Assembly (NCBI RefSeq): GCF_001194135.2 | Contig: NC_068982.1 | Location: 108,489,040 to 108,538,507 of the forward strand | From: Octopus bimaculoides | Lineage: Eukaryota | Reading direction: 5' to 3' | DNA: 49,468 bases | Part shown: positions 7,540-49,468 of the stretch, in pieces | Layout of the letters: each line of letters begins with the position of its first letter | How positions within the stretch are numbered: position 1 is the stretch's first letter | Notes under the pieces: generated by a model | Databases searched by the model: none | What the model was told of the DNA's origin: nothing | What the model saw: the letters and a program-made list of their open reading frames with translations, nothing else | Program-made: the position numbers and the translations under genes

Positions 7540-7858
7540 CCAAAATTCCTTGTCTTGCAAGTTACTTGGTGACCCTGCTGGTGCCACATAAAAAGCATCC
7601 AGTCCACTCTGTAGTGGTTGGCTTTTGGAAGGGCATCCAGCTGTAAAAACCATGACAAAACTGACCTTGCCTGTGCTAGTGCCACATAAAAATCCACTCA
7701 GTCCCCTTTGTGGAGTGGTTGGTGTTAGGAAGGGCATCCTGCCTTTAAAATCCTGCCAAAACAGACAGTAACCTGGGGTAGTCTCCTACCTGGCTGGCTG
7801 CTGTCAAACCGTCCAACCCATACCTGTATGGAAGGCAGATGTTAAACGATGATGATCA
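7540..7858 (+). mobile_element. RTE-tail element with duplicated gtgccacataaaaa...ggaagggcatcc module
   Basis: Head cttgcaagttacttggtgacc is shared with 19290-19516; ends ccaacccata..atggaaggcagatgttaaacgatgatgat. Confidence 0.75.
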
Positions 7859-7929
7859 TCAGCATGTAACACCTACGTGTATGAATGTGTAATATTAGTA
7901 TGCAGAGATGTGGTACAGAAGAGATGGGA

Positions 7930-12340: not shown

Positions 12341-13351
12341 ACATACGTAAGCTCGCAAGGAATGAAGCCAGTATGCTCCGTTGGATGTGTAATGTCAATG
12401 TGAATACCCGTCAGAGTGTAAGTATCTTGAGAGAAAAGCTGAACATNNNNNNNNNNNNNNNNNNNNNNNNNNNNNNNNNNNNNNNNNNNNNNNNNNNNNN
12501 NNNNNNNNNNNNNNNNNNNNNNNNNNNNNNNNNNNNNNNNNNNNNNNNNNNNNNNNNNNNNNNNNNNNNNNNNNNNNNNNNNNNNNNNNNNNNNNNNNNN
12601 NNNNNNNNNNNNNNNNNNNNNNNNNNNNNNNNNNNNNNNNNNNNNNNNNNNNNNNNNNNNNNNNNNNNNNNNNNNNNNNNNNNNNNNNNNNNNNNNNNNN
12701 NNNNNNNNNNNNNNNNNNNNNNNNNNNNNNNNNNNNNNNNNNNNNNNNNNNNNNNNNNNNNNNNNNNNNNNNNNNNNNNNNNNNNNNNNNNNNNNNNNNN
12801 NNNNNNNNNNNNNNNNNNNNNNNNNNNNNNNNNNNNNNNNNNNNNNNNNNNNNNNNNNNNNNNNNNNNNNNNNNNNNNNNNNNNNNNNNNNNNNNNNNNN
12901 NNNNNNNNNNNNNNNNNNNNNNNNNNNNNNNNNNNNNNNNNNNNNNNNNNNNNNNNNNNNNNNNNNNNNNNNNNNNNNNNNNNNNNNNNNNNNNNNNNNN
13001 NNNNNNNNNNNNNNNNNNNNNNNNNNNNNNNNNNNNNNNNNNNNNNNNNNNNNNNNNNNNNNNNNNNNNNNNNNNNNNNNNNNNNNNNNNNNNNNNNNNN
13101 NNNNNNNNNNNNNNNNNGTGGCACATAAAAGACACCATTTCGAGCGTGGCCGTTTTCGTGCGGGTGACACGTAAAAGCACCCACTACACTCTCTGAGTGG
13201 TTGGCGTTAGGAAGGGCATCCAGCTGTAGAAACTCTGCCAAATCAGACTGGAGCCTGGTGTTGCCATCCGGTTTCACCAGTCCTCAGTCAAATCGTCCAA
13301 CCCATGCTAGCATGGAAAGCGGACGTTAAACGATGATGATGATGATGATGA
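12341..13351 (+). mobile_element. Young 5'-truncated RTE LINE spanning an N gap
   Basis: Left of the gap it encodes KLARNEASMLRWMCNVNVNTRQSVSILREKLN; right of the gap is a CpG-intact 3'UTR and (GAT)n tail. Confidence 0.85.
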
Positions 13352-15783: not shown

Positions 15784-16217
15784 TCATCATCGTAAATATA
15801 TATGCATATATGTAAATATACGTATATGTAAATATATACATGTATATATGTGTGTGTGTGTATGTATATATATATATATATATATATGTAAAAATGTATA
15901 TGTATATATGTGTGTGTATATATATATATATATATATGTGTATATATGTGTATATATACTTTCTGAGTGGTTGGCGTTAGGAAGGGCATCCAGCTGTAGA
16001 AACTCTGCCAAATTTAGATTGGAGCCTGGTGTTGCCATCCGGTTTCACCAGTCCTCAGTCAAATCGTCCAACCCATGCTAGCATGGAAAGCGGACGTTAA
16101 ACGATGATGATGATGATATATGTGTATATACATGTATATATATATGTGTGTGTATATATATATATGTAAATATATATGTAAATATATATATATATGTGTG
16201 TATATATATATGTATAT
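15750..16217. repeat. (TA)n/(TG)n microsatellite field containing an RTE insertion
   Basis: Directly visible. Confidence 0.9.
15960..16117 (+). mobile_element. Very short young RTE 3' tail
   Basis: Nearly identical to 13190-13345; (GAT)n tail. Confidence 0.9.
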
Positions 16218-19516: not shown

Positions 19517-19886
19517 AAACACACCTCCCTACCTATATTATACACACACACGCGCACACGCACACACACACACACACACACACACNNNNNNNNNNNNNNN
19601 NNNNNNNNNNNNNNNNNNNNNNNNNNNNNNNNNNNNNNNNNNNNNNNNNNNNNNNNNNNNNNNNNNNNNNNNNNNNNNNNNNNNNNNNNNNNNNNNNNNN
19701 NNNNNNNNNNNNNNNNNNNNNNNNNNNNNNNNNNNNNNNNNNNNNNNNNNNNNNNNNNNNNNNNNNNNNNNNNNNNNNNNNNNNNNNNNNNNNNNNNNNN
19801 NNNNNNNNNNNNNNNNNNNNNNNNNNNNNNNNNNNNNNNNNNNNNNNNNNNNNNNNNNNNNNNNNNNNNNNNNNNNNNNNNNNNNN

Positions 19887-22964: not shown

Positions 22965-23965
22965 AGATATGAGACGAGGTGGTGAAGCATGGTTTTCGAA
23001 CTTTGAGCTTCACAGAGGCAATGACTAGCAACCAGGACCTTTGGCAATAGGCTGTGCTTGACAAGATGCATCAAGCCAAAGTTGTGATTGATGCTGGTGT
23101 CATATAACTGGTACCCATGACAGTGGCACGTAAAGAGCACCTTTTGAGCATTGGGCATCCTCACAGAGGCAAAGTGGCTGAGTTCCTTACAAGTGGAAGC
23201 AAGTTACTTTTCAAGCATTGGGCCTCATGGAGGCGAGTTCCCTTTCGAGTATTGAGCCTCACAGAGGCAAATACCCTTTTGAGTGTTGAGCCTCATGGAG
23301 GCACGTTGCCCCTCGAGTGTTGGGCCTCATGGAGGCACGTTGCCCCCTCAAGTGTTGATCCTCATGGAGGCACGTTTCCCCTCGAGCGCTGGGCCTCATG
23401 GAGGCACGCTGCTCCTCGAGCGCTGGGCCTTGTGGAGGCGAGTTCCCCCTCGAGCTGGGCCTGGTGGAGGCAAGTTCCCCCTCGAGCGCTGAGCTTTGTG
23501 GAAGTGAGTTCCCCCTCGAGCGCTGGGCTTTGTGGAGGCGAGTTCCCACTCGAGCGGTGGAGCTCGTTGAGGTGAGTTTGCCCTCAAGCAGTGGGGTTCG
23601 CAGAGGCATGTTCGCCCTCGAGCAGTGGGCCTTGTAGAGGTAAGTTCGCCCTCTAGCACTGGGCCTTGCGGAGGTAATGACTGAAACCTTTGGCATTATG
23701 TCATGCTTGAGAAGAAGACCCATCAGGCCAAGTAAAATTACAGTTGTGGCAGATACTGGTGTCACGCAAATGGCACCTGTGATGGTAGCACGTAAAAGCA
23801 GCCATTACACTCTCGGAGTGGTTGGCGTTAAGAAAGGCATCCAGCCATAGAAACCATGCCAAATCAGAATGGAGTCTGTTGCAGCCTTCCAGCTTGCCAG
23901 CTCTGGTCAAACTGTCCAACCCATGCCAGCATGGACAATGGATGTTAAATGATGATGATGATGAT
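22965..23965 (+). mobile_element. Composite RTE-derived element: ORF end + 34-bp VNTR + second ORF end and 3'UTR
   Basis: DEVVKHGFRTLSFTEAMTSNQDLWQ at 22975-23050; VNTR at 23211-23680; (GAT)n tail at ~23950. Confidence 0.8.
23211..23680. repeat. GC-rich 34-bp minisatellite, ~14 units
   Basis: Unit starts at 23211, 23245, 23279, 23313, 23348, 23382, 23416, 23450, 23482, 23516, 23550, 23584, 23618, 23652; consensus ~tcgagcgctgggcctYRtggaggcRagttccccc. Confidence 0.95.
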
Positions 23966-28190: not shown

Positions 28191-30680
28191 TATAGTAGAT
28201 TAATTAATTGTGTATTTGTTGGTCCATGGTTTAATTTTCTTATTGCTGTTTCTTGAAGACATAATTGGACACTGAATTTTCCTCAGTCATAAGGGTCAAG
28301 GAGCTTTGCATATTTCTCTTGTCTAAGTTTTCATATTGATGCAAAAGGATGTTATACATCTTGCAGTTATCAATACATAAGGGAAGCTTAATTTCTATTC
28401 GACAGCACTTGTGAATGTTCCTCTTTTGATAGGTTTTTATATTTTTCTGGTCATATCATTTAAATGTGTGTATTTACTTGCCATTTGCTCTGATATATCT
28501 CATATACCTGCTTAATGGTGCCATCTTGCCTACATCTGATGTTTCTAAAATCTGTGAGAGGGAGACACATTCGAATATGGTAACCAACACATGCTATGCT
28601 CATATTTTTTTTTTCTTTTTGCAGCTTTATTAATGTTTTTGCTGATCTGTAACTATCTTTTCTCCTATTTTCTGTTTCCTCTTTTCACAGTTGTTTTCTT
28701 AGTGAGGATTTAAATTTATAAGGATTATTATAACTACCACATAGAATGTTGACAAATAGGTTATGAGTTTGTAGTTTCAATAATTGTGTGTTTTTGTTAT
28801 CTTGAAGTTTAATAATTTTCTTTCATTATACCAAATTATTGCTGAGCCTTAGATATTGGCTATAATATTACTACGTCTGCACCTTTATATTTTATGTTTA
28901 TATTGTGTTGCTGAAAAATTAATAAAAGTTAATTTGTAACAGTTACTTTTATTTTGTTCACTGTAGTCAGAACACATCCAATCCATGGCAGCATGGAAAA
29001 AGTGGACATTAAAATTATGACAGCTGCTAAAGATTTTTGGTGCTTGGAAAATGTAATTCCTGAGATGAGGAATAGACTGCTGCAGTGCTTTATATTTTGA
29101 TTCAGACTGTATTTTTCTTACAGTCAGAGATTACTAGGAGGACCACTGTTTCCATGCTCTATATCTTAAATAGATATTTTTCAATTTCTTTGGATACATT
29201 TCTGTTTTAGACATGATTAAGTAAATATAAAAATAGATATTTCATTTCTTTTAATTTCAGGCTGCATATGATTGGTTGGCCAATGCTTCCCTGTCATCAG
29301 GCTATGCTATCTCTTGCAAGTATATTGCTATATTGCTGGGAACAGTGTACATATTCCATCATTGCAGCTCTGTTGTGTATCTTTTTTATTCTTTATATCA
29401 AAAGTGAAGCGATTGCTTCTGCTTTGTAGTTCAATCCCTTAGGTTAATTTTCAGGCCCAGTTGGTTAAAAATAGGAGCCAGACCCTACTCTTTCTTATTT
29501 CAGTTTCCATCTTTATGCTTGTATTTTTCCTTTTTGCAAATATTACAATTGGTGAAGAAAAATATTCATATATTTCTTTTCTCTATATTGTCCGATTTGA
29601 GATAAGGTATATTTTCTACTTGTTTACAATATTGATTTATAAAAAGTGTTCATTTTTGTTTGCATTTGGTGGCACAATATTTTAATATCTATCTCTTGAT
29701 GAATTCTCCACATAGTACAATATTTTGGGTACATGTTTTTCATTTTATAGGAAGGAGTTAATTGAGTGTGGGAAGAATCCCTGTTGTATGAATATAGGAA
29801 GAATCCCTGTTGTATGAATATAGGAAGAAGAAATGAGAACTTGAGGGAAATCATGTATGATACAAATGTTATTGATATTGTGAGCAGGTTGGTGAATTGA
29901 GAGAAACAGTAAAGTAAGGGCTAGATTAAATGGCTTACAGTATTTATATTCCGAGTTCAAATTCCATTGTCATAAACTTTAACTTTTACCCAACACACCA
30001 GTTATGTACTGGCTTGATTTAATTAACTATATTTCTTCTACAAATATGTGGTTTCATGCCAATATCAGAAATCATTATTACTAGTGATGGTGTTAGTAGT
30101 AAATGTATTGGCTGCTAAACTTCTTAGTTTTCAGAACCTGAAATTCAAATCTTGTCCAACAAGAATTTAAAATAAATGTGATTACATTAACTTAATCTTG
30201 TTATTCATATTTCTCATATTAGAAAGGCTTGAAGAGGCTAAAGGTACTACCCTTCTTCCACAAACTACCAAACTAATGAAAAGAAAAAAAAAAAAATGAA
30301 AAATGTATGTACGTAATACATATTTCAGCTCTGAAATGAGCAGTCAACTGTAAATTAATCATTTCCACAAATATATAAAGACGTTCTTTTGTTCTTCAAA
30401 TAGGTTTTGTGACTCTTTCCTTCATTGCCAAGAATTCTGAACCTTGACCACTGTGGCACTTGGTCTATTAATATTTGTAATTTATTTTCATCATTAATGT
30501 CTAGAACCTATGTAGAATCTTTTTTCTATTTCCCACATGTGGATGCCAGCTTTTGATGTAAGCTTATTGGAATTTCTCTTGCCATATATATTTTTATAGT
30601 CTGAGGTCATAAACTTTTATTCATTCCTTTCCATTCCTTTTGTTAATATACCCAAAGTACTTATTTGAATTAACAGCATA

Positions 30681-31861
30681 TCTCTCTCTACACTCTCTCT
30701 CTCTCCCCCTCTACTCTCTCTCTCTCTCTCCCCCTCTACTCTCTCTCTCTCTNNNNNNNNNNNNNNNNNNNNNNNNNNNNNNNNNNNNNNNNNNNNNNNN
30801 NNNNNNNNNNNNNNNNNNNNNNNNNNNNNNNNNNNNNNNNNNNNNNNNNNNNNNNNNNNNNNNNNNNNNNNNNNNNNNNNNNNNNNNNNNNNNNNNNNNN
30901 NNNNNNNNNNNNNNNNNNNNNNNNNNNNNNNNNNNNNNNNNNNNNNNNNNNNNNNNNNNNNNNNNNNNNNNNNNNNNNNNNNNNNNNNNNNNNNNNNNNC
31001 TCTCTCTTCTCTCCCTCTACTCTCTCTTCTCTCCCTCTACTCTCTCTTCTCTCCCTCTACTCTCTCTTCTCTCCCTCTACTCTCTCTTCTCTCCCTCTAC
31101 TCTCTCTCTCTCTCTCTTCCTTCCCTCTACTCTCTTTCCCTCTACTCTCTCTCTACTTCTACACTCTCTCTACTTCTACACTCTCTCTCCCTCTACTCTC
31201 TCCCCCTCTACTTCCTCTACTCCCTCTACTCTCTCTCCCCTCTTTACTCTTTCTTCTCTCTCTCTTTCTCCTCTCTCTCTCTCTCTCTTTCTCCTCTCTC
31301 TCTCTCTCTCTTTCTCCTCTCTCTCTCTCTTTCTCCTCTCTCTCTCTCTTTCTCCTCTCTCTCTCTCTTTCTCCTCTCTCTCTCTCTTTCTCCTCTCTCT
31401 CTCTCTTTCTCCTCTCTCTCTTTCTTTCTCCTCTCTCTCTTTCTTTCTCCTCTCTCTCTCTTTCTTTCTCCTCTCTCTTTTTCTCCTCTCTCTCTTTCTC
31501 CTCTCTCTCTCCTCTCTCGCTTTCTCCTCTCTTTCTCCTCTCTCTCTCTCTTTCTCCTCTCTCTCTCTTTCTCCTCTCTCTCTCTCTTTCTCCTCTCTCT
31601 CTTTCTCTCCTCTCTCTCTCTTTCTCCTCTCTCTCTTTCTCTCCTCTCTCTCTTTCTCTCCTCTCTCTCTTTCTCCTCTCTCTCTCTTTCTCCTCTCTCT
31701 CTCCTCTCTCTCTCTCTTTCTCCTCTCTCTCTCTCTTTCTCCTCTCTCTCTCTCTTTCTCCTCTCTCTCTCTCTTTACTCTCTACTCTCTCTCCTCTCTC
31801 TACTCTCTCCTCTCTCTACTCTCTCCTCTCTCCCCTCTCTCTACTCTCCTATCTCTCCCTC
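30681..31861. repeat. ~1.2-kb pyrimidine/purine low-complexity tract (CT-rich, gap inside)
   Basis: 20-bp unit tctctcttctctccctctac repeated at 31001-31090, then ttctcct(ct)n units. Confidence 0.95.
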
Positions 31862-32975: not shown

Positions 32976-33340
32976 GTAGTGTAGAGTTTCAATTATTGCA
33001 TTATTTATATGATACATTGTTCAAGTTGTTTATTCTTTAAAGCATACACATGTATCACTTTTCCATTTATTCATTCAGGCTAATATGGGTTGGATAGTTC
33101 TGAAAAGTTTTGGAAACATGCAGGTAACATGTATTAAGTGGAGTAAATTTTAAATTCAGCAAATATACTAAATCACTATTAAATAATTCTTAGGAGGGAA
33201 TTGATCCTCTGTATCTGTAGTAGTTATAGTTTGGCTATATAATATGGAAACATACTAGCCTTTTCCCCTCTGTATTATTTTCTTTTGTGCATTTTATTAA
33301 AAAAAACTTTAAGCAAACCTTTTGAAAGATGAAACTTGTA

Positions 33341-33773
33341 CATCATCATCATCATCATCATCGTTTAACGTCCGCTTTCCATGCTAGCATGGGTTGGACG
33401 ATTTGACTGAGGACTGGTGAAACCGGATGGTAACACCAGGCTCCAGTCTAATTTGGCAGAGTTTCTACAGCTGGATGCCCTTCCTAACGCCATCCACTCA
33501 GAGAGTGTAGTGGGTGCTTTTACGTGTCACCCGCACGAAAACGGCCACGCTCGTAATGGTGTCTTTTATGTGCCACCCGCACAAGCCAGTCCAGGGGCAC
33601 TGGCAACGATCTCACTCGAAAATCCTACGGGAGCCAGTCAGGCGGTACTGGCAACGGCCACGCTCAAAATGGTGCATCTCATGTGCCACCCGCACAAGAA
33701 CCAGTCCAGGGCACTGGCAACGATCTTACTTGGCTTGCCGGGTCTTCTCACGCACAGCACATTTCCAAAGGTC
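33341..33773 (-). mobile_element. Young 5'-truncated RTE LINE 3' end
   Basis: (CAT)n tail, CpG-intact 3'UTR modules, ORF-end ggtcttctcacgcacagcacatttccaaaggtc; 4 mismatches over ~215 bp versus 13118-13340. Confidence 0.92.
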
Positions 33774-34296: not shown

Positions 34297-34413
34297 CCGC
34301 ATCCATTTGATGAATGTCGTTTTGACGTCAGCGTCAATGATAATGTATGGTATCTTCGTGCCAAAGATGTTGAAGAAAGGAAATTGTGGGTTGGTTCTAT
34401 AGAATTACACAAG
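34297..34413 (+). CDS. CERT1: Internal coding exon of ceramide transfer protein (CERT/COL4A3BP), C-terminal half of the PH domain
   Basis: Acceptor ttttatcttttcag and donor aag|gttagt; 117 nt, phase 0/0. Encodes [39 protein letters not shown], 26/39 identical to the human CERT1 segment as I recall it ([39 protein letters not shown]). Confidence 0.93.
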
Positions 34414-34669
34414 GTTAGTGTTTGCCCTCCCATCCTTTTAATGTTTTTAACCCGTTCCAATGTGACTTGTGTGTAAAGATAAAGTGAATATCTGTATATT
34501 TAAGACACTTTTATACTCACAAAACCTACCAGAAGAGAACATTGAAATATGTTCAATGACAATTTCTGTTATACTTTATATTTGCATTCTCCTCTTCAGC
34601 AAGAAGTCTGTTCCTGTCCCCCTATCAAACTTTTACCTCTTTCAATACTATACCGCACTCAGTTGAAGA

Positions 34670-34870
34670 GTACTTGGTCTTCCGAGTACTTGGTGGCACT
34701 AGTTCTAGTGCCATAAAAAAAAAAGTACCCAGTACACTCTAGACATTAGGAAGTGCATCCAGCTGTAGGAACCATGCTAAAGCAGACATTAGAGCTTGGC
34801 ACAGTCCTTTGGCTTGTCAGTTCCTGTTGATCCATTCAACCCATGACAGCATGGAAAAAAGGATGTTAAA
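34670..34870 (+). mobile_element. Old RTE-tail element
   Basis: gtacccagtacactc..taggaagtgcatccagctgtagg..ttcaacccatgacagcatggaaaa..gttaaa. Confidence 0.7.
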
Positions 34871-35501
34871 TATCGCACAAAATTTTGTTCTAAATCTCTT
34901 ATCGTAGTTTTATCAATTAATTTACCATTTTATTTAAATTGGGTTTTATAAAAATATTCTAATAATTCTGAAGCTTATTTACTGCTTAATAGAGGATCTC
35001 CAAATTTGCAATGTATCAAAAGAAATAGAATGATGTTCTTAGAAACTAACTGTTATGTATATAGAAGTGCTGCTTGTCTGAACAGTTAATGTTGCTTTAA
35101 TCTCTTTGATATTGCAAGCATTTTTTTTTTTCACTTTTTATTTTACACTATTTGTTTTTATGAAGATTTGTTTTCTTCATTTTACTAATTGCATTGCTTC
35201 TTTTCTAACATTAGCCTTTAATTTCCTCCATTTCTTTCACTAAATGCTTCTCATTTTCTCACTTTTTACTCTGTGTTGTCTTCTTCTTGTTGGATTTTTT
35301 TTCTTGAGTCTTTTATTTTAATATTTCTACAGAAGCTATTATTTTACTTGTGTAATTAGTATTTGTAATAACAATGGTTTTCATTGTTGGAACAAAAATA
35401 GTTTGTTTTCTATAATCTTGCTAACAGTAAATAAACAGTTTTATTGTTTTTCTTTTGTTGTTCACTGTCTCGGAAAATTTTGTGGGTTAGAGTAATGGAT
35501 T

Positions 35502-35715
35502 ATCATCATCACCCTTTTACTTTTCCTTATTGACTTGGGTGAGACAGGTCTTCACAATTCAAGTCAGTTCTTACTTAGGCAGGTTGGGGTCATGTTTTGC
35601 TTGTATGTTCCATTTTTGGCATGGTTTCTATGGCTGGATGACTCCACCCCCAACTTATTGCCAGTCATTTTACAGAGTGCACTGGGTGCATTGTATTATG
35701 GTGTCTTGTCTCCAG
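35502..35715 (-). mobile_element. Old RTE-tail element
   Basis: atcatcatc tail; tttctatggctggatg..cagagtgcactgggtgc. Confidence 0.6.
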
Positions 35716-36299
35716 AAAGACTGAAAAGTTCCCTCTACCCTATTTTATCTCTGACATTCACTAATTACTTCACATCACATAGTTTATTGAGTGGCACTAG
35801 CATTAAAGAGTTTGTCTTCTCCCCATCAAGATGCCCTTCTCTGTTGCATTGTCTCTGTTCATTTGTTCACCAGCACTGGAAGGTTGTCTTGTAACTCAAA
35901 AGACTAAAGAGTCTTCTTTGTTCAGTATTGTCTGTGTACATTCATTTCTTTCTAACTAGAGTGAGATGGTGATAGAGAAGAGATTAAAGGATGGGGTGGG
36001 GAGAGAGAGAGAGACAGACAAACAGTTGTTGGTTAAGTTAACAAATAGAGAGTAGGTTAGTACTAAAGAAGGGATTCAATGTGTATCTGTCAAATGCATT
36101 GGAATTTCTTGTTACACAGGTGTGTCGGGTGAGATAGTGAGAGCAGGGAGTCATTGTTTGGATGTGGGGTGAGTGATCAGTAAGAAAGTAACAGTGGTTG
36201 GGGAGTGGTTTTCGAAGATTTAATATATCAGAAGGGATCCAAATGTAAATATTATACATCCCATTTTCCATTCGCATTTTAAATCTCTTTCATACTTGA

Positions 36300-37640
36300 A
36301 TTGGTCGGGCACAGCTTCTCTAGCACAACACATCACTGCAACTTGTGATCCCTTGTTATTTTCCTTGTGAGGTTCAGTATCCTGAGATCAGTTTTCACTA
36401 TCTTGTGTTTACTTTGATCTTCCTTGTCCACATGTTCCATCCATTTGGAGTGCTGAGCACTTCTTTTTGCAACTCACTGCCTCCATATGCATCACATGCC
36501 CATACCAGCACAGTTTTCTTCATTGCACACTACAACTGATTCTACTTATATTCAATTTTTTTCTCAGTTCATTTGTGCTTTGTTGTCATCCTACACATTA
36601 ATATGACACATCCAACACTCTTTACATATCCTCTGCATTCAGTGCCCACCTCTTTATACATCATTGTACTTTGTATACAGGCATCGTACAATCTGAGCAA
36701 GAAATCCTTTGCTGCCAGTCAAGGTAATAGCTCCCTGAATTTTTCCCATACTGTTCATAGAAACTATACATTTAGAGCACCCACAGCTACTGCTAATTAG
36801 GTCACCTACAGAATAAAAGCTATTAGCAGCTTCTTGGGAACTTTCCCAATAATTGAGGGAATTTATTTCATATGTACTATTACTGCTAACTACTGTGTAC
36901 GTCTGCCACATATGATGTCTATCTTTACTATAGACCTGCCAGTGGTCCTACTAAATCTCTTGTGTCCATTAATTACAGTGGGTATACCACATTGAATTCC
37001 TACTGGCTTCTTTCCTGCATATCAAGCACACCCATTTTTTCAATGGTAATAGAATCCTATCTTCTTTCTTGTTAATTAAAACTTTGGTCTTTGTTTTGTT
37101 TGCTTTAAGACTTCTCATTTTTAGGTTTTACTTTAAGTGTGGAAATTCCTCTGTAAATTGTTGGCTAATTTAGCTATATGAACATGATTATAGGCATACT
37201 GGAGTTATTTCAAACTCTAAGTATGACCAAGATCCCCATAATGAACAGAAGGGAGCTGAGAACTGAGCTCTGATGTACATTCCTCTGCGTGCTAAATTCT
37301 TCTCTAAACTCTTTAACTCTCACCTTGCTGACAGCATCTCTAGACATGTCGTGTATGGTTCTCACAAGCCATTCAGCTATCATTAATTTTCTTACTAACC
37401 ACCTGATTATAGAGCATAAAATCTTGTCAAAGGCTGTCTTCCAGGTCAACAAATGCATGTATAGTGGCCTACTTCTAGCTAAGTGCTTCTTCCATATTTT
37501 CACTAGGAAGTGGGCGAGAGCTTCTTTCCTGCATATCAAGCACACCCACTTTCCCAAAGTCTTCTTTGTTGTTAACTAAAACTTAGCCTTAAGATCTCTC
37601 ACTCTTAGGTCTTGCTTTAAGTGTGGAAATTCTGAGCACA
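36300..37640 (-). mobile_element. Decayed RTE LINE, RT core to C-terminus, with a duplicated internal segment
   Basis: KKHLARSRPLY..KTAFDK...EWLVR..SKVRV...VHQSSVLSSLLF (37210-37557) and NSFYSVGDLISSSCGCS (36654-36911). Confidence 0.85.
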
Positions 37641-38812
37641 AACTTGGACTGTGTCTTGTCTTGGTTAATTCTGTTCTTAATCAGTGCTGCTTGTAATTAG
37701 TCCTTCAGTAGGTTACATAACCTACTCCAGCAATCTGATGCTTCTGTAATTGCCTCTCTTCTAAATCATCTTCTTTGCCCTTTTAGCAGTTGATAGTGAC
37801 CACTACTTCCTGCCAGCCATTGGGTGTGACACTTCACTAATAATGCATATAACTAGTTCATTATCTATTCCACCATATTGTTTTGTTATGTTGCATTATT
37901 TATTAAAAGATCTTGACTCAAGGTTTATATGCTGTACTGTTGCATTGTAAAGTTTCTTTTTGCTGGATTATGAAATGTCTAGTTGGAAAAATATACAGAA
38001 CTGAACTTGAAACATTCGATGCAAGCAGATTTATTAAGGGCTTTCAAGAAAATTTTGTTACAGAATTCTATATGATGCCAATATTAATTTTACTACACAT
38101 TTGTGATGCTATATAAACAGATTTTTCTTAAATTTCTCTACTTTTGCTATCAATTTTAACACTTTATTTGTACTATCATTACAATATTTCTTTTTTTTTT
38201 TTAATCTGATAAAGCGGGAAAAAATCAATGAGTGTCACAAAAATAGTTTTTGGTGCATCGCAAGGGCACTTAATGATGATTTCATCTCCATTTTATTTAT
38301 TCCTGTATATTGATTATTTTGTTTATGGAAGCAGGAAGGTATAAGCCACTATTTGTAGCAGTTTTGACAGGGTACCATACTCTAATCTGATGTTCACATG
38401 TGTAGATGATTGGTTTATGTGAGCTTGCAAGCCATTTAATAAAATATCTTCAATAAAATGGGAGTTAGCAATGAGTTCAGTGAGGAATTTAGTATCAGGT
38501 GGAGCTCCTATCTGTGTTGATGATCTAGTTGACTCAAAGAATTAGAGAAGAAATTAAAAATGTGGATGTAAAGTACAGAATTAAATGGTCTCAAAGTAAA
38601 TTTTAATGATAAAAGTCCTTGGTAACAAGGAAGAAACCTGGATTCTACCACCATCAGAACTCAATATGCAGAAAAATAGTAGGTAGGAATTCCATATAGT
38701 ATACCCAGTGTAGATTATAGGAGCATGAGATATACTGGAATCATAGGCAGAGTGACAGAGTGGGAAGACTTCATTTATGGCAGATTCACAATAGCAATTA
38801 GCAGTAAGGGCA

Positions 38813-39620
38813 CATCATCACCATCAACTTTAGTCCATTCCCCATGATGGCATGGGTTGGACAGCTTGAGAGGAACTGGCAAGGCCAGGGGCACACCGGT
38901 TTCATACACTGTTTTGGCTTGGTTTCTATAGTTGGATGCCCTTCCTAATACCAACCACTTTACAGAGTGTGCTGGGTGCTTTTTATGTGGATGCTTTTTA
39001 CATAACACCATCAATTCTGTTATGATGAGCAGGTCTTCTTGAGTATAGCAATGTGCCACATATCTCGGTCCTCTGTCATCTCCTTTGTAAGGCTTAGTGT
39101 TTTGAGCCGGTCTTCAGTACTTTGTCCCAGGTCTTCCTGGGCCTCTCTTTTCCACAACTTCCCTCCACTTTAAGTGATTGACATTTCTTTATACAACTGT
39201 CCTCATCTATCTGCATCATGTGATCAAACCAGTGCAGTCTCTTCTCTTGCACACCACATAATTCCTCTTATGCCCAACTTCTCTCTGTCCTGTCACACAT
39301 GCTCAATAACATTACACATCCAGAAGAGCATACCAGGTTCATTCTTCTCTAGTCTTCAGATGTCGTCTGCATTCAGGGCCTATGTCTTACTACCATGCAG
39401 CATCACAGTTCATACACATGCATCACACAATCTTCCCTTCACTTGGAGAGGGGGGAGAGAGAAAGAGAGAGACATGGTTGCCAACAGAAGTAAAAACTCT
39501 GAACTTTCCCCATCCTATTCTTATTTTAGCAATTACACTTTATGTACAGCCTCCTCCACTAATAATTAGGTTACCTAGGTAGCAGAGATTATCTACAACT
39601 TTCAGAGAGCCACCTGTGGA
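38813..39620 (-). mobile_element. RTE LINE 3' ~800 bp, ORF end joined to long 3'UTR and tail
   Basis: - strand VVDNLCYLG..GGGC..RIGWGKF, RLEKNEPGMLFWMCNV, RPRKTWDKV, then cacccagcacactc..ccaacccatgcc..(gat)n. Links the tail-only copies to an RTE ORF. Confidence 0.85.
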
Positions 39621-39641
39621 ATAAATTCTTTTTAATACTTG

Positions 39642-40295
39642 TCAGGCTCCTTAGAAGTAGTTGATGCTTTTTGTTATCGTTCATAATGGATCCTCTGATA
39701 GCATATAGCTTGAATGAAAACAAGATGGAAACAGTTTAGGTATCCATTACTTCTGTCATCAGTTCAAGGATTTTGTCCGTGAGTGAAACATAGATTATAT
39801 GATGCTTGTATTTGATGCACAATGTTGCATGGTAGCCAAACATGATTACTGATTGTAGAGGATTTACAGAGTTTGGAGAGAAATGAAGTGAGCATGTTTT
39901 GCTGGAGGTGTACTGTTACTTTGCATAAAGAACAGAGTACAAATGAGCCAAGAGAAAAATTGGGTGCCTAATGAATTGATGTAAGAGAGATGATTGTGCT
40001 GGTAATTGGCATGTAATACATATAGCAGATGTCATATGAGTAAAGAACTGCTGAGTGATTTAAGTAGAAGGAACCTGTTGAAAAGGAAAATTGAGGAAGA
40101 AAAACATTGGAAGAAGTTTTGAAAGCTAATCTCAAGTGGCTGAACTTCACAAAGGAGATGACAGAGAATCACAACAAATGTTGTGATGCTATGTTAGAGA
40201 AGACTCTTCTAACCCATGCAAGCATGGAAAGCAAACATACTTAGATGCTCTCCATTCAACCCATGTAAGCATAAATAAGTGGACATTAAATGATA
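39642..40295 (+). mobile_element. RTE LINE 3' fragment with short 3'UTR
   Basis: GSLEVVDAFCY, RLYDAC..TMLHGS, LERNEVSMFCW..REKLG, then agaagac directly followed by aacccatgcaagcatgg. Confidence 0.75.
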
Positions 40296-43071
40296 AATAT
40301 GTTGGTGACGATGTCATTATCGTAAGTAAGCTATATTCTTAGAAAATGGGATGAGTTTTCATCACTATTTTCTGTTTTAATCCTGTTTGAATTTAAGGAT
40401 AGTAAATGTAGCATTAAAACTGCAAGATGGATGGAAGAAGGTAAGTTGTATGATGCTGTAAAGTCTGTAGAATTTTGTATACTGGAAAAGAATAAATTAA
40501 TTTATATCCCATTGAATCTGGTGTGTGAATTTAAGAGATAGATAAGTTATGACTTAATGGTTGGTTATAATTGACTATCAAAAATATTGTTTTTGCTATT
40601 ATATCCATGTTAAGAAAACAAGACCATATTTGTTGACTGTCTGAATTTGGTAGCAGAAGATACACAAAATAAATGTTGGTAAGCAAAATCTGGAAGGAAG
40701 TATAATGGACCTTAAAGGGTTTGTCAACAGAGGAAATGATACACAGTTATGTGGGAAGATCTGATTGAGTGGAATGTTTTAGCTTCAATAAAGTAATCAG
40801 AATGAAATGCTAATGAAGCAATGTCTATTAGAGGGTGGACTCCTACTACCCTACCTCCACAATTTCATTACATAAAGTTGATTTGAAGAGATTTGATATA
40901 AGGAGATTGCAAGTGTTGGATAGAAGTTTTGTTTTTAACTTTTCAAATAAGTAATACTTGCAAATTGTAGCATGTTTTGGGAGAAAGGAATACGATCAGT
41001 TATTTTTTTAGTAATTTTTCATCATTTTCATATTCTGTTTATCTTTAATCAAAATATACAATTTTACACAAAATATAAAAACAGCAGTCAGTAATAGTTA
41101 TTTATTAGTTCAGGAATGTTTATAGTTTGCATAGTTGAAAACATATTTGGATAACAAGTGGAACTTGTACAGTTTTTTTTGTTTTTTTTTGGAGGTCAGA
41201 CAATGTATCATCTGTATTGTTGTTCAGAAGCAAAACTGTTTAAAAAGAAGAATGAAAGCTTTAATTTTTGTATTCTGAACCTTTGACCTTGTAAAATCAC
41301 GATAAACACTGTTTTTTTTTTCTTTTTTAAAGAGACACACCAAAATTATTCAAAATGTTTGTCATTGTATAAGTATATGGTTGTTTAATTGCCATAACAT
41401 CTACTTGCTGCTGATTTTTTATCATGTTCATATTTACTACAGAATTGCTGATAACAAAATAAGTCAGTGTTGTATATTTGTAGCTTCTTTGGGAATACTA
41501 CTACATATAAGATGATTATCAACTTTATAGATACACACACTAGGTTTCACCTTCCATAATTGTGTTGTGTTTCTTACATTTTATGCACTAATGTAGACAA
41601 TGCTTATTGTTATTAATAATTTATGATTTTTAAGAATGTGTGTAGAGGAAGTGTCGGAGTGAGTGCGTTATCAGGTCACTGGTTTCTGAACAATGAATTC
41701 CTATCTTACTGTAGATATTTTGATGTGTCTGTGAGCAAGAACCTTTCATTTTTTTGCCTTTAGTTTTTCTAAATGGAGACTAGGTATTTGTTGTTTGGTC
41801 CCAGGTCAACTTTGATGAAACAAATCTATAATCAAAGGCATTTTTAGCATGACCACCTCATCTTTTTTAGGAGTTATGTAGGAGTACATTATATACTTGA
41901 GTTAAGTGATTCCAAGGAAAGTTGGCTGCTGTTTTTAACGTGTCAGGGACTAAATTAAAGTTCCCTCTTTGGCTCATGGAGAAGAGATAGACTAGGAAAA
42001 TTAACAAAGAGATTATTTATTAAGTTAATTTATTCAGTAAATATCTCAGTAGATAAGAAATCTTTTCTTCTTGCTTGATGGTTCAGCTTGTTGTTCTCAG
42101 CTTGTAAAGTAAGCTGGCAACTAAGTCTGTTTGTAAATTTGTCTTTTATAATTGAAAAAGCATGTATACATGTGTCTGTCATTTTTTCACACATTGGCAT
42201 GCCGAGTGATAAGATGTTTTGACTGGATTTTTTGTAGGAACTATTTCTGAAAAGCCTCAGGCCCTTCTAGGGAATGTTACCTAAGAAAGACTAGCATCCT
42301 ATCCTGAGTGACAAATCTCACTTGTCCAACGATAGTAAATCTAGAGATATGCATTAACCTTATTAAACCTTCAAGATATATTATGCTCATATTTTTGTGA
42401 TTTTAATTTCAAGTAAATATGAAGCTTAGATTTCAATAGGAATACTGGCTACAATATTGTAATCAGGTTCTTGATTTTATGAATTTAGCTCCCAGGTACA
42501 CCCCTCTCTTATTTCTGCATATTTCTGTGCATTTGCAAATCCTCTAGATTGGGAAGATTTACAAAGTTTTTTTTACATTGGTTAGTTTTGAAAAACATGT
42601 AAAATAAACAGTTGCAATCATGTTTGTGCATGCACTCAAAGCACAATCATTATGGTTTTAACTTTAGTTTTGCAAGTTTGTGTGAGTGTATGTAAGTGTG
42701 TCTATTTGCATATGTGTGTTAGAACTAATTAAAGACTTATTTGTAAGCTGACTGCTCTAACTGGCTGATATTTTGCACATTGCTTGACCCTTGTACCTTC
42801 TTTTAACTATCCAAAATATATTAATCACAAAGTCTTACTTGTACATAAACACTCATATATTTACAGTGCTTTCTCGTGGTTTAGCTAAAATATCAAAATA
42901 ATGTTGTAATGGAGATAAATATTAATATTAGACAATCACTTTTGTAATATTCTACAAGCATGGATAGTCAAATTAATAGAGCTTCTGTCAACCTCTCAGT
43001 ATGATTGAGGTTCATATTTTGGTATTGCCAATACAGTGTGACAGTGGCCATGACTCTTAACTTTGAAATTA

Positions 43072-43457
43072 CCTTTTTACCCGTTTCGGTCATTGGACTG
43101 CGGCCTTGCTGGGGCACTGCTTTAAAGGGTTTTAGCTGGACAAATCAATCCTAGTACTTACTTTTTTGAAACCTGGTACTTATTCTACTGGTCTCTTATG
43201 GTGAACTGTTAAGTTACAAGGATATAAACAGACACTGGTCGTCAAGTAGTGGTGAGGAGCAAGCACAAACATGCGTGCGCACACACACACAGATATGTAC
43301 ATATAAATATAGACACAATGAGCTTTTTTCAGTTTCCATCTTAGCAAATCCACTCACAAGGCTTTGCTCAACCTAGGACTGGTGCCACACAGTAGGATTG
43401 AAAACAGAACCATGTAGTTGGGGAGCAAACTTCTTACTACACAACCATACTGCACCT
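43072..43457 (-). mobile_element. tRNA-derived SINE family A, older copy
   Basis: Colinear with 27800-28190. Confidence 0.85.
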
Positions 43458-43776
43458 GCATATTTACACCTCTTCCTCATAGTTTTAGGGTATCTAACTC
43501 TAGGAGAGACGAAACAACTCAGTAAAATTTATAAGGGTTTTGTAGCTTTTCAGTGCTGAGTTATGAATAAAGTTTGAAGATGGTGCATGCCAAAGTGAAA
43601 CACATTGATTATACTATTTATTCAAAGATCATTAGTTAGTTATATGATTCAGTTAATATGTCCTGATATATTAACTGTGAAAAAAAAAAAAAAAAAGTGC
43701 CAGTTAAGCTACATGATGGTATAGATGACATTAGTAAAAGTTGTTCACCAAAACAATTTCATGGAATGGTCATATA

Positions 43777-44728
43777 TGCAAGGCATACAAAAACTATCCA
43801 ACTTTATTTTTTCTTGCCAAAACTAATGCCACATAGGGAAAATCCTTTAGGTGGTAGGTGATGCCACCCTTCCTGTGCATGTGTGAAAATTTTTGCACCA
43901 GTAGGCCATGTTAGTTCCCAGCCATTACATCTGGAGTACAGATGTGTACTGAGTGCTTGTTGGATTTTTGTTTTCACCAAATGCATTAAGCAGAGGTATT
44001 GCATCAAGTTTTGCAAAAAGCTTGATGGTACTCTTGCGCAAACCATTCAGAAGATTCAGCAGGCCTTTGGCAATGATGCCATGGGAAAAACTCAAATCAA
44101 GGAGTGGTACAGCTGCTTACCTCAGTGGAGACATGGCCACACCTCAGTGGAGAGCAAGGCCACACCTCAGCGGAGAGCAAGGCAAACTCAAGCGGGTCAT
44201 CTACAATCCAAATCGAGGAGCTGATTGAGAAGGTTTAACAAATAATGATCAAAGACCATTGTGTAACAATCCAGGAAATTGTTCATGAAGTGAGAATAAG
44301 CATAGGATCAGTGCACTCCATATAAACGGAAGATTTGTGCATGTGGAGAGTGTTAGCAAAATTCGTCCCCAAGGTGCTGGCAGAACAGCAGAAGCAACTC
44401 TGCATAGAAATTGCTCAGGACATCCTGGACTGTGCAAACCATGACCCAGACTTCATGAAGACTATCATCACTGATGATGAAACCTGGGTTATGGCTTCTA
44501 CTTGATGTGTTCGGTCATCTTGTGTGAAAACAAAAATCTGACGTGCATGCACTGCATATCCGTATTGTAAGGGTAACAGCCAAGGAACTGACACCACCTA
44601 CCAACATGAAAATTTTCATGCATGCACAGGAAGGGAGGCGTCCTCTCCCACCCAAACGATTTTGCCCATGCGGCATTAGTTTTGGTGGGAAAATATACAG
44701 TTGGATACTTTTTGAATGCACCTTGTTA
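43777..44728 (+). mobile_element. Non-autonomous mariner derivative: N-terminal transposase pseudogene between ~220-bp inverted arms
   Basis: QRYCIKFCKKL...IQQAFGNDAMGKTQIKEW, AKFVPKVL..Q..IAQDILDC...FMKTIITDDETWV (first catalytic D region); 44497-44728 is the reverse complement of 43777-~44000. Confidence 0.9.
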
Positions 44729-45362
44729 ATGCTTAAATTTACAGTTAAAATAAATTCATGTGATAGGCAAACATTTGAAGGAAAAATTTTTTCACAGTTA
44801 TGTGAAGCAAGGATTTTTGAATCTCTAAAATATATACAAATTTCTAGTCATGAATTCTAAATGGAAGATGAACACTAATGTGTAAGACTAAATGAATGCA
44901 CAAATCAAATTTAAGGCCAGCTAAAACTTTTTTTGTTAATTAGAATTTTCAATTGAGGAAAGTTGACAGTTTTTAATTTTATGTTAGATCTTTATGGCAG
45001 TAATCATAATACCCTTTGAACTTTGGAAATACAAATTTGCACTAGGCAACACTAGATTGAAGAGTCTATCAATAATTAACTACCATTTTATCTTTGACTG
45101 AGATTAATTAGACTTAAAATAATAATGTTATAAGAAACGTGTTAACTATTGCATGAATCTTGGCTACTGTAACAAATTACTTCTGAAACTAACAAACTTA
45201 ATCCCTTCACTGTTACTTACCCTCATCTCATTTTTCCTTTTTTTCTTTCTTTTTTTTTTAGAATTTAAAATTCTTTTTAAAGCATATATTTAAAATTTCA
45301 TATCATTTGTTTTTAATTTCACTTTTTATTAATTTTTTCCCCTTCTTTTTCTGGTACTGTAG

Positions 45363-45416
45363 GAACATGTGACAAACAGTCCGGATTTAGCATCCGGTAT
45401 CCAGCCATATATCCAT
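45363..45416 (+). CDS. Candidate 54-nt symmetric cassette exon of CERT (EHVTNSPDLASGIQPYIH)
   Basis: Pyrimidine tract ttttttccccttctttttctggtactgtag before it and donor cat|gtacgt after it. 18 open codons in phase 0, matching the phase-0 end of exon 34297-34413. No homology recognised. Confidence 0.5.
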
Positions 45417-45933
45417 GTACGTCAACCCTTCTTCCATCTCCATCAGCTTAGAAACTAACATGCTTATGCTTTGTTTCAAAATATTGCTGTCATTGATATT
45501 GCTTGGGATGCTTATCATTGAAATACCACTGCATTGCTGTCTAACATTTTAACACTGTTCTGTTAAGTTCTGTCTCACAAAAAATTTGTTGTAAAATGCA
45601 AATGTATTATAATTTATCTCTGCAAGTTCATTTATTTAAAAAATAATTTTTATGACAATTGACTGATAATTCTCTTTTTCATAGTTATTAGGTTTCCCTC
45701 ACTTGAGTCAATTTCATCTCTTCCACTGTTAATAAGTTAGTTAACTAAAGGCAAATTCTTTTATAGTAACTGCAAAATATATTGTGCAATTGCTATAAAA
45801 CAAACTTATTTTCAATATATTGCTTTGTTTCTTACTATCAAAAAACCTTGAACACATTTTTGTGTTTTACTTGTGCCATACCTCCTAATAAGTTGCACAG
45901 TAAAATTCCTGATAAACAAAACATGAACCTTTA

Positions 45934-48171: not shown

Positions 48172-49468
48172 GATGATTGGCATATTGGATATGCCAGATG
48201 ATTGGCATATCCCTGTTGGATATGCCAAATGATTGGCATATCCCTGTTGGATATGCCAGGTGATTGGCATATCCCTGTTGGATATGCCAGGTGATTGGCA
48301 TATCCCTATTGGGTATGCTAGATGATTGGCATATCCCTGTTGGATATGCCAGGTGATTGGCATATCCCTGTTGGATATGCCAGGTGATTGGCATATCCCT
48401 GTTGGATATGCCAGGTGATTGGCATATCCCTGTTGGATATGCCAGGTGATTGNNNNNNNNNNNNNNNNNNNNNNNNNNNNNNNNNNNNNNNNNNNNNNNN
48501 NNNNNNNNNNNNNNNNNNNNNNNNNNNNNNNNNNNNNNNNNNNNNNNNNNNNNNNNNNNNNNNNNNNNNNNNNNNNNNNNNNNNNNNNNNNNNNNNNNNN
48601 NNNNNNNNNNNNNNNNNNNNNNNNNNNNNNNNNNNNNNNNNNNNNNNNNNNNNNNNNNNNNNNNNNNNNNNNNNNNNNNNNNNNNNNNNNNNNNNNNNNN
48701 NNNNNNNNNNNNNNNNNNNNNNNNNNNNNNNNNNNNNNNNNNNNNNNNNNNNNNNNNNNNNNNNNNNNNNNNNNNNNNNNNNNNNNNNNNNNNNNNNNNN
48801 NNNNNNNNNNNNNNNNNNNNNNNNNNNNNNNNNNNNNNNNNNNNNNNNNNNNNNNNNNNNNNNNNNNNNNNNNNNNNNNNNNNNNNNNNNNNNNNNNNNN
48901 NNNNNNNNNNNNNNNNNNNNNNNNNNNNNNNNNNNNNNNNNNNNNNNNNNNNNNNNNNNNNNNNNNNNNNNNNNNNNNNNNNGATATTTTCTTGATGTGA
49001 GTCACATTTGTATTTTCTTATTAAAATAAGATGATTGGCATATTGGATATGCCAGATGATTGGCATATCCCTGTTGGATATGCCAAATGATTGGCATATC
49101 CCTGTTGGATATGCCAGGTGATTGGCATATCCCTGTTGGATATGCCAGGTGATTGGCATATCCCTATTGGATATGCTAGATGATTGGCATATCCCTGTTG
49201 GATATGCCAGATGATCGGCATATCCCTGTTGGATATGCCAGATGATTGACATATCCCTCTTGGATATGCTAGATGATTGGCATATCCCTGTTGGATATGC
49301 CAGGTGATTGGCATATCCCTGTTGGATATGCCAGGTGATTGGCATATCCCTGTTGGATATGCCAGATGATTGACATATCCCTGTTGGGTATGCCAGGTGA
49401 TTGGCATATCCCTGTTGGATATGCCAGGTGATTGGCATATCCCTGTTGGATATGCCAGGTGATTGGCA
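48172..49468. repeat. 31-bp hairpin minisatellite (gRtgat TGGCATATCC ctgtt GGATATGCCA), interrupted by a gap and running off the window
   Basis: ~9 units at 48172-48452 and ~14 at 49030-49468; each unit holds a perfect 10-bp inverted repeat. Confidence 0.97.

What the first reader, a model, noticed from the sequence alone, without database searches (positions are those of the whole stretch)
45363..45416. Candidate lineage-specific 18-aa cassette exon just after the CERT PH domain
Seen: clean acceptor, gtacgt donor, 54 nt, open in phase 0, and CpG retained in an otherwise CpG-poor intron. Downstream are ACTAAC (45454-45459) and TGCTT twice (45461, 45467). Established: in vertebrate CERT the PH domain is followed directly by the ESGYGSE linker and the serine-repeat motif (SRM) whose phosphorylation shuts off PH/START activity; ACUAAY and YGCY are Quaking/STAR and Muscleblind motifs. 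Inference: a regulated, possibly neural or muscle, insertion of EHVTNSPDLASGIQPYIH between PH and SRM could tune CERT autoinhibition. It is distinct from the known vertebrate 26-aa CERT-L exon, which lies near the START domain.
Basis: partly seen in the sequence, partly recalled or inferred. Interest (0 to 1): 0.7.

Follow-up and report, generated by a model that had tools for sequence, protein, structure and literature searches.

The report
Conserved alternative exon in octopus CERT
The 54-base segment is a real, alternatively used exon that adds 18 amino acids to the flexible tether after the membrane-targeting domain of the octopus ceramide transfer protein; public annotations of four octopod species already contain it, so it is a correct call but not a new discovery.

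Summary
Every sequence detail in the finding checks out. Window 45363-45416 is ctgtag|54 nt|gtacgt and is open in phase 0 after the CERT PH exon (34297-34413). It has 2 CpG plus one in the donor, ACTAAC at 45454-45459, and TGCTT at 45461 and 45467.

The exon is real and already annotated. The exact peptide EHVTNSPDLASGIQPYIH sits between ...IELHK and (Q)AESGYGSE... in RefSeq Octopus bimaculoides CERT isoforms X1 and X2, and is skipped in X3-X5. A Q2 variant occurs in O. sinensis X1-X3, in one of three transcript-derived O. vulgaris isoforms, and in the Argonauta hians model.

Against the A. hians gene, this is the best-conserved block of the whole window:
- Exon: 52/54 nt identical.
- First 43 intron nt after the donor: identical, ACTAAC included.
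- Last 50 nt before the acceptor: 86% identical.
- Constitutive PH exon flanks: about 50%.

Decapodiform sequences and other molluscs lack the insert. Bivalves insert 6-9 aa at the same junction, probably through an alternative donor. AlphaFold places most of the cassette in the disordered PH-SRM tether.

Regulation by Quaking or Muscleblind, and tuning of autoinhibition, remain untested inferences. Novelty: already known in databases, and not found in the searched literature.

The parts
34297..34413 (+). Constitutive CERT exon encoding the C-terminal part of the PH domain (residues 80-118 of O. bimaculoides CERT X1). It ends in phase 0 with donor AAG|gttagt.
   Evidence: tblastn with human CERT and with P0274. 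It is 39/39 aa identical to the Octopus and Argonauta proteins. Against A. hians it is 109/117 nt identical, and all 8 differences are synonymous.
45313..45362 (+). Conserved upstream intron: pyrimidine tract and acceptor (cccttctttttctggtactgtag).
   Evidence: 43/50 positions identical to A. hians L003. The 50 nt upstream of the constitutive PH exon are only 48% identical.
45363..45416 (+). 18-codon alternative cassette exon encoding EHVTNSPDLASGIQPYIH, which forms residues 119-136 of O. bimaculoides CERT X1/X2.
   Evidence: Sequence read. The exact peptide is in P0274 and P0273, and is skipped in P0268, P0269 and P0277. It is 52/54 nt identical to A. hians L003 52309-52362.
45417..45459 (+). 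Donor gtacgt plus 43 nt of intron perfectly conserved between Octopus and Argonauta, ending in ACTAAC (45454-45459). Candidate intronic splicing-control element.
   Evidence: Alignment A2 and segment identities.
45460..45566 (+). Further conserved downstream intron at 73-74% identity. It holds TGCTT at 45461 (not conserved), TGCTT at 45467 (conserved), and a conserved TGCATTGCTGxCTAACATTTT stretch.
   Evidence: Identity falls to 43% beyond 45567.
45233..45550 (+). Whole conserved block around the cassette. It is the highest-scoring Octopus-Argonauta match in the window.
   Evidence: blastn of the window against L003 gives 81.7% over 327 nt and 299 bits, against 224 bits for the PH-exon block. 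It matches a single colinear place in L003, unlike the interspersed repeats.

Best explanation
Window 45363-45416 is a genuine, evolutionarily conserved, frame-preserving alternative cassette exon of the octopod ceramide transfer protein gene (CERT/COL4A3BP). The window is most likely Octopus bimaculoides.

When the exon is included, it inserts 18 residues right after the last helix of the PH domain and 7-8 residues before the SLKRHGS kinase site that opens the serine-repeat motif. This lengthens the disordered PH-SRM tether from about 14 to about 32 residues. When it is skipped, the PH exon joins the SRM exon directly, as in vertebrates.

Shown here: the exon exists in annotated isoforms, both inclusion and skipping forms are annotated, and the exon, its splice sites and about 150 nt of flanking intron are under strong constraint.

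Inferred: inclusion is regulated through the conserved flanking intron sequence, by factors not identified here. At the protein level, the insert changes how readily the phosphorylated SRM folds back on the PH domain, and so modulates CERT autoinhibition.
For: Annotation
- The exact peptide is in RefSeq O. bimaculoides X1 and X2. A Q2 variant is in O. sinensis X1-X3, in O. vulgaris CAI9717079 and in A. hians GAB1604727.
- Skipping isoforms are annotated in the three Octopus species.
- O. vulgaris alternative forms were added by PASA from Iso-Seq and RNA-seq assemblies (PMC10700109). This is a transcript-based pipeline independent of NCBI Gnomon.

Conservation against the A. hians locus
- PH exon at L003 38573-38689, cassette at 52309-52362, SRM exon from 62842/62845, with the same phase and the same ctgtag and gtacgt sites.
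- Cassette 52/54 nt identical, next 43 intron nt identical, and the preceding 50 nt 86% identical.
- The constitutive PH exon has 8 synonymous differences and flanks at 48-56% identity.
- Only about 6% of the 15 kb after the PH exon aligns at all, and this block scores highest.

Alternatives excluded
- It is not a repeat.
- It matches no Rfam family.
- It has no significant RNA structure, z = -0.41.

Protein context
- In the AlphaFold2 model of P0208, the PH helix spans residues 104-123 and reaches the first five cassette residues.
- Residues 126-175 have pLDDT below 50, so the rest of the cassette lies in a disordered tether together with the SRM.
- The introduction of PMC9368931 cites an NMR study suggesting that the hyperphosphorylated SRM interacts electrostatically with the PtdIns(4)P pocket of the PH domain. 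Tether length is therefore a plausible control parameter.
Against: - No RNA-seq junction reads could be examined here. The transcript support is second-hand, through annotation pipelines.
- The A. hians model may have been built by homology to Octopus proteins (PMC12682272).
- There is only one synonymous and one non-synonymous difference between Octopus and Argonauta. Coding constraint therefore cannot be separated from nucleotide-level constraint, and the intron flank is as conserved as the exon.
- No recognisable motif or domain was identified in the 18 residues.
- The effect on autoinhibition is pure inference.
- Tissue specificity is unknown.
Confidence: 0.9

Rival explanations
1. The exon is spliced in, but the selected object is an RNA or DNA element rather than the peptide. 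It could be a splicing-control module, an intronic enhancer, or a cephalopod RNA-editing duplex. On this reading the 18 residues are a tolerated passenger in a disordered linker.
For: Conservation is as high in the 43 nt of intron after the donor as in the exon. The cassette lies in a region of pLDDT below 50. The two substitutions give no usable dN/dS.
Against: The open frame, the multiple-of-three length and both splice sites are retained in Argonauta. 17 of 18 residues are identical. No stable local RNA structure was found (z = -0.41) and no Rfam family matched. Flanking-intron conservation is the usual signature of regulated alternative exons, so it does not argue against a coding role.
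Confidence: 0.25
2. It is a chance pseudo-exon that gene predictors picked up and that spread between annotations by homology transfer.
For: From the sequence alone, about 0.3 such segments are expected per 15 kb with a crude matrix. The A. hians pipeline used Octopus proteins as evidence.
Against: The block is the best-conserved stretch of the window, in an otherwise largely unalignable intron. O. vulgaris isoforms were derived from Iso-Seq and RNA-seq PASA assemblies. NCBI lists both inclusion and skipping forms in two species.
Confidence: 0.03
3. It is an ancient cephalopod or mollusc exon that decapodiforms also have, rarely included or unannotated, rather than an octopod-specific one.
For: Decapodiform genomic DNA could not be fetched, because the gene ranges exceed 100 kb. 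Absence from annotation is weak evidence. Bivalves also vary this junction.
Against: Seven decapodiform sequences, including transcript-derived ones (P0281 on 98 contigs, P0166 on 18), all read IELHK(Q)TESGYG. The bivalve inserts (VFHNIEVE, VFCSTE) share no similarity with the octopod cassette. They begin with V-F, as expected for read-through into the intron at an alternative donor.
Confidence: 0.15

Closest known systems
RefSeq ceramide transfer protein isoforms X1/X2 of Octopus bimaculoides (XP_052834554.1, XP_052834555.1, XP_052834556.1) and X1-X3 of O. sinensis (XP_029649682.1, XP_029649698.1, XP_029649707.1)
   Same: The O. bimaculoides isoforms carry the identical 18-residue peptide at the identical junction. 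The O. sinensis isoforms differ by one residue (H2Q)..
   Different: Nothing differs. This is the same exon, so the finding re-discovers an annotated feature.
Vertebrate CERT-L / GPBP 26-aa alternative exon
   Same: It is also an in-frame alternative cassette exon of the same gene, and it also lies in an inter-domain region.
   Different: The vertebrate exon is serine-rich and lies between the FFAT motif and the START domain (my own knowledge; PMC11642137 mentions the splice variant that lacks a serine-rich domain). [quoted passage not shown]
Bivalve CERT isoforms with short inserts at the PH|SRM junction (Pecten maximus X2/X3, Argopecten irradians X1, Ylistrum balloti X1, Mytilus edulis X1)
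   Same: They lengthen the PH-SRM tether in frame at the same exon junction. Many of these taxa also share the tandem CAGCAG acceptor that gives +/-Q.
   Different: The inserts are 6-9 residues (VFHNIEVE(Q), VFLNIDVEQ, VFCSTEQ). They start with Val-Phe, as expected from use of a downstream alternative 5' splice site. A genomic read-through ORF, P0001, reads LHRVFCSTE. They are not a separate cassette and are unrelated in sequence.
Conserved regulated alternative exons with conserved flanking introns (general class, described for mammals)
   Same: The exon is short, symmetrical (a multiple of three), has a sub-optimal donor (CAT|gtacgt), and has about 100-150 nt of conserved intron on each side.
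   Different: The trans-acting factors are unknown here. The class is defined from vertebrate and insect data, not from cephalopods.

Membership tests
Frame-preserving alternative cassette exon | Canonical AG acceptor with a pyrimidine tract, and a GT donor | tested here: met
   ctgtag|G...CAT|gtacgt. Both sites are identical in A. hians.
Frame-preserving alternative cassette exon | Length is a multiple of three, and the exon is open in the phase set by the upstream exon | tested here: met
   54 nt. The PH exon ends in phase 0, and there is no stop codon.
Frame-preserving alternative cassette exon | Both inclusion and skipping mRNAs exist | tested here: met
   Both forms are annotated in O. 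bimaculoides (X1/X2 against X3-X5), O. sinensis (X1-X3 against X4-X6) and O. vulgaris (1 against 2). The O. vulgaris forms come from PASA transcript assemblies. Raw junction reads could not be examined with these tools.
Frame-preserving alternative cassette exon | Conservation of the exon and flanking introns in an orthologous gene | tested here: met
   Exon 96% identical, +1..+43 100%, -50..-1 86% against A. hians. Flanks of the constitutive exon are 48-56%.
CERT / COL4A3BP gene | The neighbouring exon encodes the CERT PH domain, and the full protein has a PH-SRM-FFAT-START architecture | tested here: met
   The PH exon is 67% identical to human CERT and 100% identical to the octopus CERT proteins, which carry PF00169 and PF01852. 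Only the PH exon and the cassette lie inside the window.
Vertebrate CERT-L (GPBP) 26-aa exon | Serine-rich insert located between the FFAT motif and the START domain | tested here: not met
   The cassette lies at residues 119-136, directly after the PH domain. It has 2 serines in 18 residues.
Quaking/STAR-regulated exon | ACUAAY element in the flanking intron | tested here: met
   ACTAAC at 45454-45459 is conserved in A. hians. The motif is not enriched in the window (24 matches against 26.6 expected), and it sits in a stretch where every base is conserved.
Quaking/STAR-regulated exon | Binding by, and splicing dependence on, a QKI/STAR protein | not testable with these tools
   This needs CLIP, knock-down or a minigene experiment.
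Muscleblind-regulated exon | Cluster of YGCY motifs near the exon | tested here: inconclusive
   There are two TGCTT copies. The copy at 45461 is AGCTT in Argonauta, and the copy at 45467 is conserved.
Transposon-derived (exonised) exon | The exon lies within an interspersed repeat | tested here: not met
   There is no second copy in the window. There is a single colinear match in L003, whereas the window's SINE-like repeats hit more than 10 places.
Intronic non-coding RNA gene (miRNA or snoRNA) as the reason for the conservation | Stable hairpin or a match to a known RNA family | tested here: not met
   Fold z-score is -0.41. No Rfam match at E <= 1.

The most novel reading that the evidence does not exclude
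The length of the disordered tether between the CERT PH domain and its serine-repeat motif may be a splice-controlled rheostat of CERT autoinhibition that molluscs evolved more than once. Octopods would do it with a dedicated 18-aa cassette guarded by highly conserved intron sequence. Scallops and mussels would do it with an alternative donor adding 6-9 aa. Many taxa add a further +/-Q from a tandem acceptor. If so, sphingomyelin synthesis could be tuned by tissue without changing kinase input.
Probability: 0.25. Interest if true: 0.55.

Novelty: already known. Interest (0 to 1): 0.3.

Why it matters
CERT is switched off by phosphorylation of the serine-repeat motif next to the PH domain. Human mutations that break this switch cause intellectual disability (PMC10178846, PMC8605338). 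An alternative exon that more than doubles the tether between the PH domain and that switch is a natural experiment on how the tether controls autoinhibition. Its flanking introns are very strongly conserved, and bivalves vary the same junction independently.

For genome annotation, the result is ordinary. No paper in the searchable library links octopus and CERT. The biology of the exon therefore looks unexplored there, but its existence is not news.

Tried and rejected
- A protein search with the 57-aa PH exon plus cassette returned no candidates. A 151-aa junction profile returned only short non-cephalopod fragments. The tool appears to return proteins of roughly the query's length. Only the full-length profile reached the octopus proteins.
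- An exhaustive HMMER search with the 57-aa query found PH-exon read-through ORFs and distant CERTs. Nothing matched the cassette residues. The one long alignment, P0041, is intron read-through.
- Genomic DNA for O. sinensis, O. bimaculoides and the cuttlefish could not be fetched, because the gene ranges are 101-108 kb. Conservation in close Octopus species and presence or absence in decapodiform introns could not be tested. Only A. hians (93 kb) was available.
- No other CERT exon was found in the window. Neither exon 1 nor the SRM exon is present. The downstream junction partner lies beyond 49468.
- An RNA structure or RNA gene as the cause of the conservation was rejected.
- Exonisation of a repeat was rejected.
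- ACTAAC enrichment was rejected as evidence in itself.
- No divergence date for Octopus and Argonauta was found in the papers read. Only a fossil minimum of about 29 Ma used as a calibration appears. I therefore used the intron and synonymous-site divergence of the same locus as the neutral yardstick.

Full report
**Observation**

Window 45363-45416 reads ctgtag|GAACATGTGACAAACAGTCCGGATTTAGCATCCGGTATCCAGCCATATATCCAT|gtacgt. It is 54 nt long and translates to EHVTNSPDLASGIQPYIH.

The upstream exon at 34297-34413 encodes [39 protein letters not shown]. This is 67% identical to human CERT residues 78-116 and ends in phase 0 before gttagt. ACTAAC lies at 45454-45459, and TGCTT at 45461 and 45467.

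The window is strongly CpG-depleted, with observed/expected 0.24 overall and 0.16 in the intron 34414-45362. The cassette keeps 2 CpG in 54 nt, and only 5.3% of 54-nt windows downstream of the PH exon do that.

I scored splice sites with a crude matrix written from remembered consensus frequencies. With it, the candidate is the only phase-0-open, multiple-of-three AG...GT segment in the 15 kb after the PH exon whose two sites score at least as well as its own. Two such segments occur on the + strand of the whole window and none on the - strand. The sequence alone is therefore suggestive but not compelling.

No other CERT exon lies in the window. Exon 1 and the SRM exon are both outside it. The window also contains five assembly gaps.

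**What it is**

A full-length CERT profile search returned 'ceramide transfer protein isoform X3 [Octopus sinensis]' (P0208). It reads ...[44 protein letters not shown].... Its 90% cluster settles the question.

| Species | Isoforms with the cassette | Isoforms that skip it |
|---|---|---|
| O. bimaculoides | X1 (XP_052834554.1/55.1), X2 (XP_052834556.1): exact window peptide EHVTNSPDLASGIQPYIH | X3-X5 (IELHK(Q)AESGYG) |
| O. sinensis | X1-X3: EQVTNSPDLASGIQPYIH | X4-X6 |
| O. vulgaris | CAI9717079.1: EQVTNSPDLASGIQPYIH | 2 further isoforms |
| Argonauta hians | GAB1604727.1: EQVTNSPDLASGIQPYIH | none annotated |

His at position 2 is seen only in O. bimaculoides, so the window is most likely from that species.

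The O. vulgaris alternative forms were added by PASA updates from Iso-Seq and RNA-seq assemblies (PMC10700109). That is transcript-based support from a pipeline independent of NCBI's. The A. hians models used homology to Octopus proteins among other evidence (PMC12682272), so I do not count that model as independent transcript evidence.

**Comparative test**

The A. hians gene was the only cephalopod locus short enough to fetch (L003, 93 kb). The others span 101-108 kb. In L003 the PH exon is at 38573-38689, the cassette at 52309-52362 and the SRM exon from 62842/62845. The ctgtag acceptor and the gtacgt donor are the same.

A blastn of the whole window against L003 gives few colinear matches outside the exons. 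The best of all, at 299 bits, is 45233-45550 against 52172-52495. The PH-exon block scores 224 bits.

| Segment (relative to the cassette) | Identity to A. hians |
|---|---|
| -50..-1 | 86% |
| Exon | 52/54 |
| +1..+43 | 100%, through ACTAAC |
| +48..+150 | 73-74% |
| Beyond +150 | 43-48% |

The two exon differences are CAT to CAG (His to Gln) and ATC to ATT (synonymous). For comparison, the constitutive PH exon has 8 synonymous differences in 117 nt, and its flanks are only 48-56% identical. This pattern of a short symmetrical exon, a sub-optimal donor and conserved flanking introns is the classical signature of a conserved, regulated alternative exon.

Three other causes of the conservation were excluded:
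- The block is single-copy.
- It matches no Rfam family.
- It folds no better than shuffled sequence, z = -0.41.

**Distribution**

Seven decapodiform sequences all read IELHK(Q)TESGYG, without an insert. They are three annotated Acanthosepion pharaonis proteins, three transcript-derived ones (one seen on 98 contigs), and P0166, which is 96% identical to the cuttlefish protein. Gastropods, a chiton and most bivalve isoforms read ...LH(K/R)QA(E/D)SGYG. The data therefore fit an octopod-specific exon, but decapodiform introns could not be inspected.

The same junction is also variable in bivalves. Scallops have isoforms with VFHNIEVE(Q) or VFLNIDVEQ, and Mytilus has VFCSTEQ. These inserts start with Val-Phe, and a read-through ORF reads LHRVFCSTE (P0001). 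They are therefore probably made by an alternative downstream donor.

Many taxa also show +/-Q. In A. hians this comes from a tandem cccagcag acceptor.

**How it probably works**

An AlphaFold2 model of the cassette-containing O. sinensis isoform (39-sequence alignment; mean pLDDT 69) shows a confident PH domain. Its last helix, residues 104-123, runs into the first five cassette residues. Residues 126-175 then have pLDDT below 50, covering the rest of the cassette, the ESGYGSE linker and the SRM.

Inclusion therefore lengthens a disordered tether from about 14 to about 32 residues between the PH domain and Ser of the LKRHGS site. PKD phosphorylation of the equivalent human Ser132 primes CK1G phosphorylation of the SRM. 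The hyperphosphorylated SRM represses both the PH and START domains, and an NMR study suggests it interacts at least partly with the PtdIns(4)P pocket of the PH domain (introduction of PMC9368931).

A longer tether would change the effective concentration and geometry of that intramolecular contact. This is my preferred mechanistic reading, but it is inference only.

The intronic ACTAAC is conserved and could bind a STAR-family protein. However, it is embedded in a stretch where every base is conserved, and the motif is not enriched in the window. One of the two TGCTT copies is not conserved. The Quaking and Muscleblind proposals remain untested.

**Comparison and novelty**

The exon is identical to an already annotated feature of RefSeq and ENA gene models, so its existence is already known. 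It is not the vertebrate CERT-L exon, which lies at a different position and has a different composition. I found no paper in the searchable library that links octopus and CERT, so its biology appears undescribed there.

**Verdict**

Interest is low to moderate (0.3).

Noticed in passing
window 30352-30579 (A. hians L003 37869-38093): A 229-nt block is 81% identical between Octopus and Argonauta. It lies in the intron upstream of the PH exon, 3.7 kb upstream in the window and 0.5 kb upstream in Argonauta. It has no CERT coding match. It could be a conserved non-coding element or an unannotated exon.
   Followed up: partly
window about 31237-31780, next to the assembly gap 30753-30999: A long purine/pyrimidine-skewed low-complexity tract. 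It translates as KRERE repeats on the minus strand, and GC skew is -0.68 in the 30-32 kb bin.
   Followed up: no
window 2432-2593, 7717-7859, 13184-13351, 15952-16117, 23820-23965, 33338-33510: Copies of a roughly 160-nt interspersed (SINE-like) repeat. Each matches more than ten places in the A. hians CERT locus at 70-90% identity, so the repeat family is shared by Octopus and Argonauta.
   Followed up: no
bivalve CERT proteins P0154, P0065, P0155, P0159, P0183 (not in the window): Scallop and mussel isoforms insert 6-9 residues (VFHNIEVE(Q), VFLNIDVEQ, VFCSTEQ) at the same PH|SRM junction. This is probably through an alternative downstream donor.
   Followed up: partly
L003 62838-62846; proteins: A tandem CAGCAG (NAGNAG) acceptor at the SRM exon gives +/-Gln isoforms in octopus, cuttlefish and scallop.
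   Followed up: partly
cephalopod CERT proteins, residues about 252-265 (not in the window): A second 14-aa alternative cassette lies between GRDLA and SILQQHGG. It reads F/LNQQRLFASTLIMS in Octopus and VADLSGQFSSLQIRS in cuttlefish. It combines freely with the 18-aa cassette among the annotated isoforms.
   Followed up: no
window 617-626, 12447-13117, 19586-19886, 30753-30999, 48453-48982: Five runs of N (assembly gaps). The last one lies in the intron downstream of the cassette.
   Followed up: no
tool behaviour: the search for homologous proteins seems to return only proteins of about the query's length. The 57-aa query found nothing, although P0208 shares dozens of 5-mers with it. A negative result from a short query is therefore not evidence of absence.
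   Followed up: partly
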